A stretch of DNA of 64,000 bases from Dimorphilus gyrociliatus (GCA_904063045.1 CAJFCJ010000018.1:372001-436000); one strand, 5' to 3'. Positions 17,518 to 33,956 are shown, numbered from the stretch's first letter. The notes: generated from the letters alone by a model not told the origin. Numbers and translations are program-made.

Positions 17518-18627
17518 TTTTGTCAATGTACCACACCTTTTCCAACTGCAAAATGTAAAGTCTCAAATTGTAAATACCAGAATTCTATGCGAGATGTCGT
17601 TGTCTGTATGTAATAAGCGTGCAGATCATATATAGAAGTTGCGCGTATGTAAAAGCCACGCCTCATCAACATATAGTATCGATTTTCTATAATTTTATAT
17701 ATTTTCATCGTAATATTTTTTGATAATTCCAACAGCAAACACAAACGAATATAAGGACAAGAATTAACTTAGCATAAAACATATCCCTAATGTTATGAAG
17801 AAAATCAACAGCTCTATGCATGTGAAGTTTATTCATAGCTATATAGGAATAATATACAAGTACAACAGCTAGATAATTATTGTTATTACCTTAAAATCAA
17901 GAAGCAAATCTGAGCAATTAAAGAATGTGAATATATATTACAAATTGTTAAATTAACCCACCTTAATATGATGTTATATTAATCGTCCATATTCCAAAAA
18001 TAATAGCTCAATGTCTGTCCAAAAATTTGCATCAACTTATAACTAAGCAAAACTACGAAATCAACTGCACTGGCTACATAAAACATACACCCTTAACGTA
18101 CCTCTTTTGCGAAAGATTTCACATTCACCCACGCTTTTTTTCTTCTTTAATCAACCAGATGGAGTGATTGTTTTTAATGTAGATAATCGTTTTTTATGCT
18201 ATGCAAAATTGTAATTGGCTCTTAATCGTTCCCTGCAAAAATAATTTACTGGGCGTATGACTTGAACAATTACGGAAATAAGTGTTATTATATAAGTCAT
18301 TGATCTTTGCCGAAGACTTATTTTTTATTTTATTTAACGACAGTTACAGAATGTTAAATATGATATTTTTGATGTAAAACATCCACAGTGGTATTAGAAA
18401 AATCAGTAGCGCGCAGATATGATAAACCAGTTACTGCACATAATGTCGAAATATTTTAGGCATCACAGAATATATCAACTACTAGAATAAACAAAAATAA
18501 GACCAATTCATTTCTCAGTCTCAGTATGTACAATTCCTATTAAAAAAGGCCTCAATCATTATATGCAGGTCGTTGAACAATTTCTGATGTAGTGATTATA
18601 TCACTTCCAGGAGACAGTTTTTAAGTT

Positions 18628-20878
18628 TTAAGCTATCGTACACGAACATTTGCAGTTAGTCCCACAACAACAGCCTCTTTTGCGGGTATCATTTGATTGT
18701 GCGGGAGGAGTTACTGGAGCAAAGTAGGCATGTACAATCAGATTTGGCAATCTGTCCTGTAATTACCATTTGTGAGAAATTAAGGTGAAGTATTAATCTT
18801 TATCGTACCTGAGGGTCAGAGCAGCACGCAACAGCGACAGTACCGTCGTCTACTCGGACCGACAGAGGTTGGTGGAGTCATTGGAGCGAAGTACGCGTGA
18901 ACTATTATGTTTTCAAGGTGTGTCTGTTTCAACAACAAACTCTTTTTTTACCAGCGTGCTGCTCTAACTGCTCTGGTTCGCGTTTAACTAACCTTAAGCC
19001 TTCTTATTCCAGCTCTTGTTATCAGCTGACAATCATATAGCTCAATTCGCTTTAAACCTTGGCAAGCGTTTAAGTGATCTAAACTAGCATCAGTAATTAA
19101 AGGACAGTTATCTAGTTCTAGAACACTTAAATTCTCAGTGGCACACGGTCCGCTTCCCAGATGCCGAATTCCTTCGTCAGTAATCAGTTCACAATGAGAT
19201 AAACTCTGAAAGAGTAAAATGTATATATTAAGATTTAATTTTAAGATAATCCTGTATAAGACTAACTATCTGAGATAGCATTGGACATTGCATTGCTAAC
19301 TGAGCTAAAGTTGCGTCAGTTATTTGATTGCATTCTTCAAGGTCCATTCTTTCTAAGTTATGGCAATTCTGAAAAACTATTTGTTAGTTTTAAACTTTTT
19401 AGAAAAAATGGTTACTCTAGCTAGAGCTTGAAAGCCGTTGTCTGTAAAGTGTGTACACTCTGCAACTTCTAGTGTCTTCAAGTCATGACATCCTTCTCCT
19501 AGTCTTACCAAAGTAGCGTCTGTTAATTGCGAACAACCAGATACACATAAAGTTTTTAACTGTCGGCAATAGGTACTGATATGCTCAATAGCAACATCAG
19601 TAATCTGCAAACAAAGTAGTGAATTATTTTTACCCATAAATATTTTTTATATACCCGGCAGTTTCTCAAGTTAATTAGTTGTAAATTTTTGCAGCCCCGT
19701 GATAGCTTTTCAATTCCTTCATCGGTTACATTTGTACAACCTTTTGCTAAAACATGTGCTAGGTCTTTGCATCCTTGTCCAATCGAATGTAATCCTTCAT
19801 CTGTGATATTGACACACCAGGATATGTTAAGGTGTATCAAATGAGGACAACCAGTTCCTATTGAGATTAGGGATTGATTTGTTATTTCAATACAGGATTC
19901 AAGATTTAGATTGGCCAAACGAACGCAGTACTGGCCAAGATGTCTACTAGTTCTAAAAAAATAAATTAATGAAATAGAATACTTTTACAAATAAAAGAAG
20001 TACAGACTCATCTGATATCTGTTTGCAATCTTTCAAATTTAAAATTTCAATACTACGGCATGATTTCGCAAAAGTGCTGCAACACGAGCAAATATCGATC
20101 AGAACATAATTTGAAAACCAAAAAAAACCTTACACCAAAGCTGCATCTGTTACATGTTTGCAACCACATAAACCAAGGGATTTTAAAAATCCACCACATC
20201 GATGAGCTATGTGCTCCACAATTCGACCTTCGATTGCTACTTGAAAATTAAATAAATCCACTCTCTGCCAGTTGCTTCCATCTAAAGCCAACATATTCCA
20301 ATACTGTTTGCAAACATAAGTAAGTCAATCGCAATTTTAAAACTATATTTCACCTTTGATACTTGTGCACATCTGCATAGTGCCACAACATCAAGGAAAG
20401 AAAATATTCTGAAAAGCCAAAATTAGTATTTGATGGTTATATACTACATAATTTACCTCAACAATAATTCTTTTGGTAATTTCTTATTGATATGACCTTC
20501 TTCCGGAGTTGACGTCGTTGGAATATCAATGCAATTCGTCTACAAATTATGGATATTGATTACTTAAAATTTGAAGCCTTTCGATGACATAAATCATGCA
20601 ATATTAAGTTGTTCACTGTTGCAAAACAACAATCTGAAATAGAAATCTTAGAAATCTAAGCGTCACAGAAATGACATACCACAATCATACTCTGGTAATT
20701 CAAATCGACGTCGGGCTAGTTAAAGAGAAACGAAGAGAAATTTTACTACCGATGGACAAACAAAGGAAGGCAAACTCAAATGGGCTTCGAAGATAAAATG
20801 TAATTTTATACGCACCTCTGACTTGGCTCTAGAGTAGGCATAGCCATTGTAATTACCTCCGTGATTATGATTGTTCAT
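18628..20878 (-). CDS. FBXL20: F-box/LRR protein of the FBXL2/FBXL20 family with C-terminal CAAX
   Basis: ATG at 20878 (MNNHNHGGNYNGYAYSRAKSE), F-box HINKKLPKELLLR|IFSFLDVVALCRCAQV and LRRs (LNLESCIEITNQSL, LEVAECTHFTDNGF, LELDNCPLITDASL, YDCQLITRAGIRRLK). Two alternative terminal coding exons both contain VHAYFAP.TPP. Co-orthologous to FBXL2 and FBXL20. Confidence 0.94.
18809..18923 (-). CDS. FBXL2/20 alternative terminal coding exon A (ends ...SRRRYCRCCVLL*)
   Basis: Acceptor GAAACAG| at 18924, phase-0 ORF THLENIIVHAYFAPMTPPTSVGPSRRRYCRCCVLL, TGA at 18818-18816 and donor CAG|GTACG 7 nt later. A 52-nt intron then leads to exon B (18756-18628: DRLPNLIVHAYFAPVTPPAQSNDTRKRGCCCGTNCKCSCTIA*). 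Confidence 0.88.
18815..18968. repeat. 15-bp inverted repeat (pre-mRNA stem) bracketing FBXL exon A
   Basis: On the transcript, intronic GUUAGAGCAGCACGC (18968-18954) is complementary to exonic GCGUGCUGCUCUGAC (18829-18815): 14 Watson-Crick pairs plus one G-U. Confidence 0.85.
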
Positions 20879-21408: not shown

Positions 21409-33682
<12,274 letters not shown>

Positions 33683-33956
33683 AAACTGGTGTTTAAGTAA
33701 TAATTAACTTTAATACTTTAATATAGCAATTTCCTACTCATTTTGTTAATTTATTTATGGATGAGGATCAATAATGTTATCACTAAACTTTTTTTAGATA
33801 AAATATAATAAGCCAAAGTGCTTTCTTTAATTATTGCAAAAATATTTTATTGACTCAATCAAATTTTCAGCAAAACAATGAATCTCATAATAGTAATAAA
33901 CTTTAATTACAATGTTTCCATATTGTAAAGCTTTATTTAATATATGTGACCTTCAC

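What the first reader, a model, noticed from the sequence alone, without database searches (positions are those of the whole stretch)
18628..18923. FBXL2/20 has a duplicated last exon that switches the prenylation signal (CVLL vs CTIA)
Seen: after ...RAGIRRLK| there are two paralogous terminal exons sharing the VHAYFAP.TPP core. Exon A (18923-18809) ends SRRRYCRCCVLL*; exon B (18756-18628) ends RKRGCCCGTNCKCSCTIA*. Exon A keeps its own donor, and its stop lies only 7 nt before the last junction, so inclusion should escape NMD and demote B to 3' UTR. Skipping A puts B in frame. Known: human FBXL2 (CVIL) is geranylgeranylated and membrane-targeted through its CAAX box; X=L favours geranylgeranylation and X=A favours farnesylation; CDC42 and KRAS use alternative last exons to change lipidation. 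Inference: one SCF substrate receptor yields a geranylgeranylated form and a farnesylated form with five additional Cys (palmitoylation or metal binding) that go to different membranes. I do not know of this being described for FBXL2/20.
Basis: partly seen in the sequence, partly recalled or inferred. Interest (0 to 1): 0.85.

Follow-up and report, generated by a model that had tools for sequence, protein, structure and literature searches.

The report
Two alternative lipid-anchor tails for FBXL2/20
A tiny marine worm's single FBXL2/20 ubiquitin-ligase gene has two copies of its last coding exon, both kept intact by selection, so it probably makes two proteins that differ only in their membrane-anchoring lipid tail; no RNA data could be reached to confirm the splicing.

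Summary
On the minus strand a 9-exon FBXL2/20 gene ends its shared part at 18993 (..RAGIRRLK, phase 0). Two paralogous tail exons follow: A (18923-18809, ..CRCCVLL, stop 7 nt before a GTACG donor) and B (18756-18628, ..CCCGTNCKCSCTIA).

A related worm genome (Logan contigs L001/L002) has the same structure. Silent sites are saturated (dS about 1-2), yet both exons are under strong purifying selection: dN/dS 0.064 for A and 0.058 for B, and 18 of 23 changes in B fall on third codon positions. B keeps all six Cys and a farnesyl-type CaaX (CTIA/CTIS). B has no ATG and is in frame only if A is skipped.

The intron before A is 85% conserved, against 50-61% for the other eight short introns. It forms a conserved 23-bp helix with the end of A and A's donor. 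The scan flagged this stretch separately for that stem (s1-081340).

About 100 full-length FBXL2/20 proteins, 33 distinct metagenome tails and two other invertebrate assemblies carry one canonical tail only.

No transcript evidence was reachable. The farnesyl-versus-geranylgeranyl reading is an inference, weakened because human FBXL2 is prenylated by GGTase3 docked on the LRR domain. This is a new variant of the CDC42/KRAS-type alternative CaaX exon.

The parts
18993..20878 (-). Nine shared coding exons of the FBXL2/20 orthologue: 20878-20816, 20539-20457, 20408-20354, 20303-20134, 20076-20008, 19952-19655, 19604-19416, 19368-19267, 19205-18993. They encode the F-box plus LRR domain and end ..RAGIRRLK at phase 0.
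   Evidence: The spliced model gives one open frame. It is 60% identical over 420 aa to a protein the source names F-box/LRR-repeat protein 20 (P0107). Exon 9 matches human FBXL2 chain 6O60_C residues 319-388 at E = 1.2e-36. The relative has the same exon lengths.
18924..18992 (-). The 69-nt intron between exon 9 and exon A, unusually conserved.
   Evidence: Core identity to L001 is 0.85, against 0.50-0.61 for the eight other short introns of the gene. Alignment.
18954..18980 (-). 5' arm of the conserved RNA helix, inside the exon 9-A intron. It starts 12 nt after the exon 9 donor.
   Evidence: Inverted repeat I2. The helix appears in the MFE fold and in the two-species consensus fold, 23 pairs. 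Duplex energy is -38.6 kcal/mol here and -42.7 in L001.
18809..18923 (-). Tail exon A, the canonical tail ending CRCCVLL. Stop TGA at 18818-18816, then 7 nt to the donor.
   Evidence: dN/dS 0.064 against L001. Aligns to human FBXL2 6O60_C 392-424 at E = 1.1e-9.
18804..18829 (-). 3' arm of the helix. It covers the last 11 nt of A's coding sequence, the stop, the 7 untranslated nt and A's 5' splice site (G|GUACG).
   Evidence: One exon change in L001 (C to U, synonymous Leu) turns a G-C pair into G-U. A second change (C to U after the stop) adds an A-U pair.
18757..18808 (-). The 52-nt intron between A and B (GTACGA...TTACAG). It is within the size range of the gene's other introns and is not conserved beyond its splice signals.
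   Evidence: core identity 0.56.
18628..18756 (-). Tail exon B, the derived tail ending RKRGCCCGTNCKCSCTIA. Stop TAA at 18630-18628. It has no ATG and is in frame with exon 9 only when A is skipped.
   Evidence: dN/dS 0.058; differences by codon position are 2/3/18, P = 1.3e-5. All six Cys codons are kept, two with synonymous changes. Aligns to 6O60_C 391-420.
18329..18627 (-). Shared 3'UTR of about 300 nt, ending at the first AATAAA (18334-18329). It is strongly conserved.
   Evidence: 82% identity over 296 nt to L001, and 93% over the 72-nt block that begins 13 nt after B's stop, with no codon periodicity.

Best explanation
**What it is.** The single FBXL2/20 gene of this worm carries a tandem duplicate of its last coding exon. 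Earlier notes of the scan name the worm as the miniature annelid Dimorphilus gyrociliatus; I did not check that. The gene uses the two exons as alternatives.

**Isoform A.** Splicing exon 9 to A gives the canonical protein. Its tail is CRCCVLL: a CaaX-Leu box for geranylgeranylation plus the two Cys that are palmitoylated in human FBXL2. Translation stops in A, and B then lies in the 3'UTR.

**Isoform B.** Splicing exon 9 directly to B, skipping A, gives a protein with the same F-box, the same LRR domain and the same last beta-strand and AYF loop. Its tail is 7 residues longer, basic and Cys-rich, and ends CTIA (CTIS in the relative). This looks like an H-Ras-type anchor: a farnesyl-class CaaX with several palmitoylatable Cys just upstream.

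**Likely consequence.** The two forms would sit on different membranes or cycle differently, so one SCF substrate receptor would act in two compartments.

**Likely switch.** A conserved 23-bp RNA helix joins the intron before A to the 3' end of A. When it forms, it loops out A and hides A's donor. It also brings the exon 9 donor to about 60 nt from B's acceptor, which is the intron length this animal's spliceosome handles best. That would favour isoform B.

**Shown versus inferred.** Shown: the exon pair, its conservation, selection on both reading frames, the frame logic, and the conserved helix. Inferred: that both junctions are used, which lipids are attached, where the isoforms go, and that the helix controls the choice.
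For: - Anatomy and frame logic are as described.
- The orthologue in a related species (L001/L002) has the same 9+2 exons with identical lengths.
- Silent sites are saturated between the two species (dS about 2 for exons 1-9). Even so, dN/dS is 0.064 for A and 0.058 for B, while the other two frames of B give values above 1.
- In B, 18 of 23 differences are at third codon positions, P = 1.3e-5.
- B keeps six Cys and CaaX = CTIA/CTIS.
- B has no Met, and a stop lies just upstream in its frame within the A-B intron. Only splicing from exon 9 can bring it into translation.
- The Dimorphilus genome paper reports no trans-splicing or operons, a median intron of 66 bp, and splicing tuned to short introns (PMC7854359).
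- There is no poly(A) signal between A's stop and 18334.
- The intron before A is 0.85 identical, against 0.50-0.61 for the others.
- The helix has 23 pairs and is kept in both species at -38.6 and -42.7 kcal/mol. Shuffled introns reach that energy in 10 of 1000 trials for the window and 0 of 1000 for L001.
- Both tails keep the strand and AYF loop of human FBXL2.
- In human FBXL2, C417 and C419 are palmitoylated and C420 is geranylgeranylated (PMC9988375).
Against: - There is no transcript evidence. No Dimorphilus full-length protein or spliced fragment was found in the protein collection.
- Only two species are available, so the age and spread of the duplication are unknown.
- The helix shows conservation and two one-sided changes but no compensatory double change. 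Its exon arm is also constrained by coding.
- The lipid assignment for B is weak. GGTase3 recognises FBXL2 through the LRR domain and AYF loop, not the CaaX (PMC9141697), so B might also be geranylgeranylated.
- The Cys cluster might bind metal instead of palmitate.
Confidence: 0.72

Rival explanations
1. Both exons are used as alternatives, but the lipid class does not switch. GGTase3 docks on the LRR domain and AYF loop that both isoforms share, and geranylgeranylates B as well. Alternatively it adds a second prenyl after farnesylation, as it does for Ykt6. The isoforms then differ in the number of acylated Cys, in charge and in tail length, not in farnesyl versus geranylgeranyl.
For: GGTase3 recognises FBXL2 through regions other than the CaaX. 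The AYF loop is clamped by PTAR1. GGTase3 also geranylgeranylates farnesylated Ykt6 on a neighbouring Cys. Both tails keep VHAYFAP. B has a Cys two residues before the CaaX Cys.
Against: Every canonical tail surveyed ends in Leu or Val, across about 100 proteins and 33 metagenome tails. B has Ala in one species and Ser in the other. That points to selection for a different enzyme class. Whether this genome encodes PTAR1 was not checked.
Confidence: 0.25
2. Exon B is not translated. It is a relic of the duplication, kept because it lies in a strongly conserved 3'UTR.
For: The 3'UTR just after B is even better conserved than B (93% over 72 nt). No transcript joining exon 9 to B was seen.
Against: Changes in B show strong codon periodicity (2/3/18) and dN/dS of 0.058, whereas the five UTR changes show no periodicity. 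Cys codons change synonymously. The acceptor AG, the frame, the stop and the CaaX are all kept.
Confidence: 0.06
3. The conserved intron and helix do not choose between A and B. They serve another purpose, for example binding a protein, holding back removal of the A-B intron, or acting as an enhancer for A's weak acceptor.
For: There is no compensatory covariation. The exon arm is constrained by coding anyway. 10 of 1000 shuffles of the GC-rich intron reach the window's duplex energy.
Against: The intron arm is invariant while neighbouring introns are scrambled. The helix spans A's donor exactly. Both changes in the 3' arm keep or add pairs.
Confidence: 0.35

Closest known systems
CDC42 alternative last coding exons in vertebrates (ubiquitous ..CVLL form versus brain ..CCIF form)
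   Same: Two alternative 3' coding exons change only the last residues of the protein. They swap one lipid-anchor signal for another that has extra acylatable Cys, and the isoforms localise differently (PMC9868626 and PMC10883850, found). The canonical box here is also CVLL.
   Different: CDC42 is a Rho GTPase, not an E3 substrate receptor. This case is a lineage-specific tandem exon duplication in a dinophilid worm. The upstream exon keeps its own donor, so the downstream exon doubles as 3'UTR.
H-Ras C-terminal anchor (..CMSCKCVLS; sequence from my own knowledge) and the KRAS4A/4B alternative exon 4
   Same: Tail B (..NCKCSCTIA or ..CTIS) has the same layout as H-Ras: a farnesyl-class CaaX with Cys at -2 and -4 that could be palmitoylated. 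KRAS also uses alternative last exons to change its second membrane signal.
   Different: No lipid on tail B has been measured. B has three further Cys and a basic patch upstream. It sits on an LRR protein that can dock GGTase3.
Human FBXL2 and FBXL20 (CaaX-bearing F-box proteins; GGTase3 substrate, structure 6O60)
   Same: The protein is 60% identical to FBXL20 over 420 aa. Exon 9 and both tails align to 6O60 chain C. Tail A keeps the C-x-C-CaaX-Leu tail that is geranylgeranylated and palmitoylated in human FBXL2.
   Different: Vertebrates diversified by gene duplication, and both paralogues keep a CaaX ending in Leu. This worm has one gene with two tails, and the second tail has no counterpart in any other sequence surveyed.
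RNA base-pairing that loops out an exon (Dscam/14-3-3 docking-selector systems in insects, from my own knowledge; the scan's unchecked notes on a COQ2 helix and clamped introns in this same genome)
   Same: An intronic arm pairs with a site beyond the alternative exon's acceptor. This loops out the exon and brings the upstream donor close to the downstream acceptor.
   Different: There is a single helix, not competing selector sites. The possible pairing with exon B is not conserved. One arm is coding sequence plus a splice donor. The effect on splicing is untested.

Membership tests
FBXL2/FBXL20 orthologue | N-terminal F-box followed by an LRR domain, collinear with FBXL2/20 over the whole length | tested here: met
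   The spliced model is 60% identical over residues 31-449 to P0107, which UniRef names F-box/LRR-repeat protein 20. Exons give Pfam LRR_6 hits. Exon 9 matches 6O60_C at E = 1.2e-36.
FBXL2/FBXL20 orthologue | Extra C-terminal beta-strand with the AYF loop (VHAYFAP) after LRR13 | tested here: met
   Present in both tail exons and aligned to 6O60_C 391-424. Its role in PTAR1 binding is taken from PMC9141697.
FBXL2/FBXL20 orthologue | C-terminal C-x-C-C-a-a-Leu (CaaX with two upstream Cys) | tested here: met
   Tail A ends CRCCVLL. Tail B departs from this: it ends CTIA, has five upstream Cys and is 7 residues longer.
Alternative last-exon lipid-anchor switch (CDC42/KRAS type) | Two alternative terminal coding exons, each ending in its own Cys-based lipidation signal | tested here: met
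   Both are under purifying selection in frame.
Alternative last-exon lipid-anchor switch (CDC42/KRAS type) | Both splice forms are made | not testable with these tools
   No RNA-seq access. No spliced Dimorphilus product was found in the protein collection. Use of both forms is inferred from selection only.
Alternative last-exon lipid-anchor switch (CDC42/KRAS type) | The isoforms carry different lipids and localise differently | not testable with these tools
   Needs labelling and imaging.
Farnesyltransferase CaaX substrate (tail B) | Cys at -4, aliphatic residue at -2, last residue Ala/Ser/Met/Gln | tested here: met
   CTIA in the window and CTIS in the relative. The rule itself is established knowledge, not tested here. 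Actual prenylation was not tested.
Structure-controlled exon skipping | Complementary arms bracketing the exon's acceptor, conserved beyond neutral expectation | tested here: met
   23 pairs in both species. The intron is 0.85 identical against about 0.55 for the others.
Structure-controlled exon skipping | Compensatory covariation, or a measured effect on splicing | tested here: inconclusive
   Only two distinct sequences are available. There is one G-C to G-U change and one gained A-U pair, with no double change. The effect on splicing is not testable here.

The most novel reading that the evidence does not exclude
Tail B makes FBXL2/20 a doubly prenylated, multiply acylated E3 receptor. FTase would farnesylate the CTIA/CTIS Cys. 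GGTase3, still docked on the shared LRR domain and AYF loop, would then geranylgeranylate a neighbouring Cys of the C-K-C-S-C run, as it does for Ykt6. The choice between this form and the canonical one would be set by a 23-bp RNA helix that folds a 236-nt intron down to the roughly 60 nt that a short-intron spliceosome prefers.
Probability: 0.1. Interest if true: 0.8.

Novelty: new variant of a known kind. Interest (0 to 1): 0.55.

Why it matters
FBXL2 and FBXL20 are the only CaaX proteins among roughly 600 E3 ligases (PMC9988375). Their lipid tail decides which membrane-bound substrates they reach, including IP3R3, p85beta and Vps34.

A natural system in which one gene makes the same receptor with two different anchors would work as an evolutionary experiment. 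It would show that anchor chemistry alone is worth diversifying for an SCF receptor. It would also give a ready-made pair of tails for asking how prenyl type and the number of acylated Cys steer an E3 between compartments.

The conserved helix offers a compact, testable case of RNA structure steering exon choice in an animal with very short introns.

The scope is narrow. So far this is seen in two related dinophilid genomes only, and it rests on sequence evidence.

Tried and rejected
1. The search of protein representatives with the 99-aa LRR exon. The list was swamped by proteins with many LRRs, which sum their scores. Only a few true FBXL2/20 proteins could be picked out by their tails.

2. 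Building a full-length Dimorphilus query from exon pieces aligned to a guide (alignments A3-A10). MAFFT stacks the LRR exons on one another. The best compromise, A10, returned 120 proteins and none was from Dimorphilus. The protein is about 60% identical to every other orthologue, so no foreign query ranks it high.

3. Searching with tail B alone: no candidate.

4. Searching with exon 9. Nearly all hits are genomic read-throughs into the intron. The only close one (P0151) led to the related species.

5. A second, 'selector-like' pairing of the intron arm with the end of exon B (I1; -22 kcal/mol). It weakens to -13.8 kcal/mol in the relative (by my reading of the two sequences, two pairs are broken), so I rejected it as chance.

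6. Rfam scan of 18250-19050: nothing near threshold.

7. Phase-0 GT sites inside exon A that could join part of A to B. All three are poor donors and would duplicate the VHAYFAP strand, so I rejected them on inspection.

Full report
**1. Observation**

- The exon ending ..RAGIRRLK stops at 18993, phase 0, with donor GTTAGT.
- Exon A (18923-18809, 115 nt) encodes a 35-residue tail ending CRCCVLL. Its TGA is at 18818-18816, followed by 7 nt and a GTACGA donor.
- After a 52-nt intron, exon B (18756-18628) encodes a 42-residue tail ending CCCGTNCKCSCTIA.
- The two tails share 17 of 29 residues around VHAYFAP.TPP (E = 2e-12).

I rebuilt the whole gene as nine shared coding exons from an ATG at 20878.

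- All introns are 47-69 nt except the first, which is 276 nt. All have GT..AG ends.
- Isoform A is 449 aa and isoform B is 456 aa.
- Because A is 3n+1 nt long, B is in frame only when A is skipped.

**2. What the gene is**

- The spliced protein is 60% identical over 420 residues to a protein that UniRef names F-box/LRR-repeat protein 20 (P0107).
- Exon 9 matches human FBXL2 in the GGTase3 complex (6O60 chain C, residues 319-388, E = 1.2e-36).
- Both tails align to residues 391-424 of that chain.
- Tail A is the canonical tail: C-x-C-CaaX-Leu.
- In human FBXL2 the CaaX Cys is geranylgeranylated and the two upstream Cys are palmitoylated (PMC9988375).
- The exon 9 boundary after RRL[K/R] is shared across animals. 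Dozens of genomic fragments read through it into a GT.

Earlier notes of this scan name the genome as the miniature annelid Dimorphilus gyrociliatus. I did not verify that. The short introns do fit the published median of 66 bp (PMC7854359).

**3. Comparative test**

The exon 9 search led to Logan contigs from two runs, L001 and L002 (SRR23372229 and SRR31984831). They are the same gene in a related but clearly different species.

- The gene has the same 9+2 exons with identical lengths.
- Exon nucleotide identity is 70-89%.
- Silent sites are saturated, with dS about 2 over exons 1-9.
- Eight of the short introns align at only 0.50-0.61 identity, which is essentially noise.

Against that background both tail exons are clearly coding.

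| Exon | Synonymous changes | Non-synonymous changes | dN/dS |
|---|---|---|---|
| A | 13 | 4 | 0.064 |
| B | 17 | 6 | 0.058 |

- In B, differences by codon position are 2/3/18 (P = 1.3e-5). The two other frames of B give dN/dS above 1.
- All six Cys of B are kept, two through synonymous TGT/TGC changes.
- B's CaaX is CTIA in one species and CTIS in the other, both in the class that favours farnesyltransferase.
- B has no Met, and a stop lies just upstream in its frame within the A-B intron.
- The genome paper reports no trans-splicing or operons.

**4. Distribution**

- Two other invertebrate assemblies whose exon 9 is 87% identical (L006, L008) have a single canonical tail.
- Nearly all of the 117 FBXL2/20 proteins fetched by a profile search of the 5.8-billion-protein collection end C[R/K]CC-a-a-L. 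The exceptions are truncated or read-through models and one predicted ray isoform without a CaaX.
- A scan of metagenome contigs gave 80 loci with 33 distinct tails. All are canonical (last residue Leu or Val). None has a second tail exon, although 68 loci have at least 300 nt downstream.
- The papers searched hold no account of alternative CaaX exons in FBXL2/20.

So tail B is, as far as can be seen, a novelty of this dinophilid lineage.

**5. The conserved intron and helix**

- The 69-nt intron before A is 0.85 identical between the species, a clear outlier.
- Its segment 18954-18980 pairs with 18804-18829. That target covers the last 11 nt of A's coding sequence, the stop, the 7 untranslated nt and A's donor G|GUACG.
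- The helix has 23 pairs. It is part of the MFE fold and of the two-species consensus fold.
- Duplex energy is -38.6 kcal/mol here and -42.7 in the relative.
- The two changes in the 3' arm either keep a pair (G-C to G-U) or add one.
- Shuffled introns reach the observed energy in 10 of 1000 trials for the window and 0 of 1000 for the relative.
- There is no compensatory double change, and one arm is coding, so this is conservation rather than proof.

With the helix formed, A's acceptor and body are looped out and A's donor is masked. The exon 9 donor then sits 12 nt before the helix, and B's acceptor 47 nt after it. The 236-nt skipping intron would thus behave like a roughly 60-nt intron, which is the size this animal splices best. 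I therefore read the helix as favouring isoform B. This is inference. The same stem was flagged separately by the scan (s1-081340).

**6. The 3' end**

- There is no AATAAA or ATTAAA between A's stop and 18334.
- The roughly 300-nt 3'UTR is itself strongly conserved: 82% overall, and 93% over a 72-nt block starting 13 nt after B's stop, with no codon periodicity.

**7. Which lipids**

The shift of X from Leu or Val in every other tail to Ala/Ser in both B tails argues for a real change of enzyme class.

Human FBXL2, however, is modified in vivo by GGTase3.

- GGTase3 grips the concave LRR surface and clamps the A-Y-F loop.
- The CaaX end is not even seen in the crystal.
- The same enzyme adds a geranylgeranyl next to a farnesylated Cys in Ykt6 (PMC9141697).

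Both worm tails keep VHAYFAP, so B could still meet GGTase3.

The layout of tail B, N-C-K-C-S-C-T-I-A/S, is most like the H-Ras anchor, which is farnesyl plus two palmitates (H-Ras sequence from my own knowledge).

My estimates are as follows:

| Claim | Probability |
|---|---|
| B is expressed through skipping of A | about 0.85 |
| B carries a farnesyl | about 0.6 |
| The helix controls the exon choice | about 0.5-0.6 |

**8. Verdict**

The core of the interpretation, two functional alternative CaaX tails, is well supported by selection but lacks RNA evidence. The lipid assignment is plausible but not secure.

This is a new variant of a known kind, the CDC42/KRAS-type alternative last exon that swaps a lipid anchor. 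Here it occurs in an E3 substrate receptor and is joined to a conserved exon-looping helix. It is known from two related genomes only.

Noticed in passing
window 18804-18815 versus 18631-18642 (minus strand): In an ungapped DNA alignment of A and B, the 12 nt spanning A's donor (TCAGGTACGATA) match B's last coding codons (TCGTGTACGATA, which encode S-C-T-I) at 10 of 12 positions. The match is 8 of 12 in the relative. B's CaaX box may have arisen from former 3' flank after loss of the old stop, with the same sequence becoming a splice donor in copy A. The protein alignment suggests a 7-residue insertion instead. The origin is unresolved.
   Followed up: partly
window 18329-18627 (minus strand): The 3'UTR is more conserved than the coding exons (93% over the 72-nt block beginning 13 nt after B's stop). 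It contains a small palindrome (GTGATATAATCAC) and ends at the first AATAAA. It probably carries regulatory sites. No Rfam family matches.
   Followed up: partly
window 20540-20815 (minus strand): The first intron (276 nt) is 74% identical to the relative, well above the 50-61% of the other introns. It may hold a regulatory element.
   Followed up: no
P0278 (Narcine bancroftii FBXL20-like isoform X2): A predicted ray isoform replaces the tail after VHAYFAPVTPPA with an unrelated sequence that has no CaaX. Vertebrates may have tail-less FBXL20 isoforms. This is a prediction only.
   Followed up: no
L001 3513-3953, minus strand of the locus: The gene caller behind the protein collection called a 146-aa antisense ORF across exons A and B in the relative, instead of the real exons. 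This is one reason the tails are absent from the protein database.
   Followed up: no
window 24000-33700 (+ strand): A large multi-exon gene on the opposite strand looks like a neurobeachin/BEACH-WD40 family member (NBEAL-like, as other notes say).
   Followed up: no
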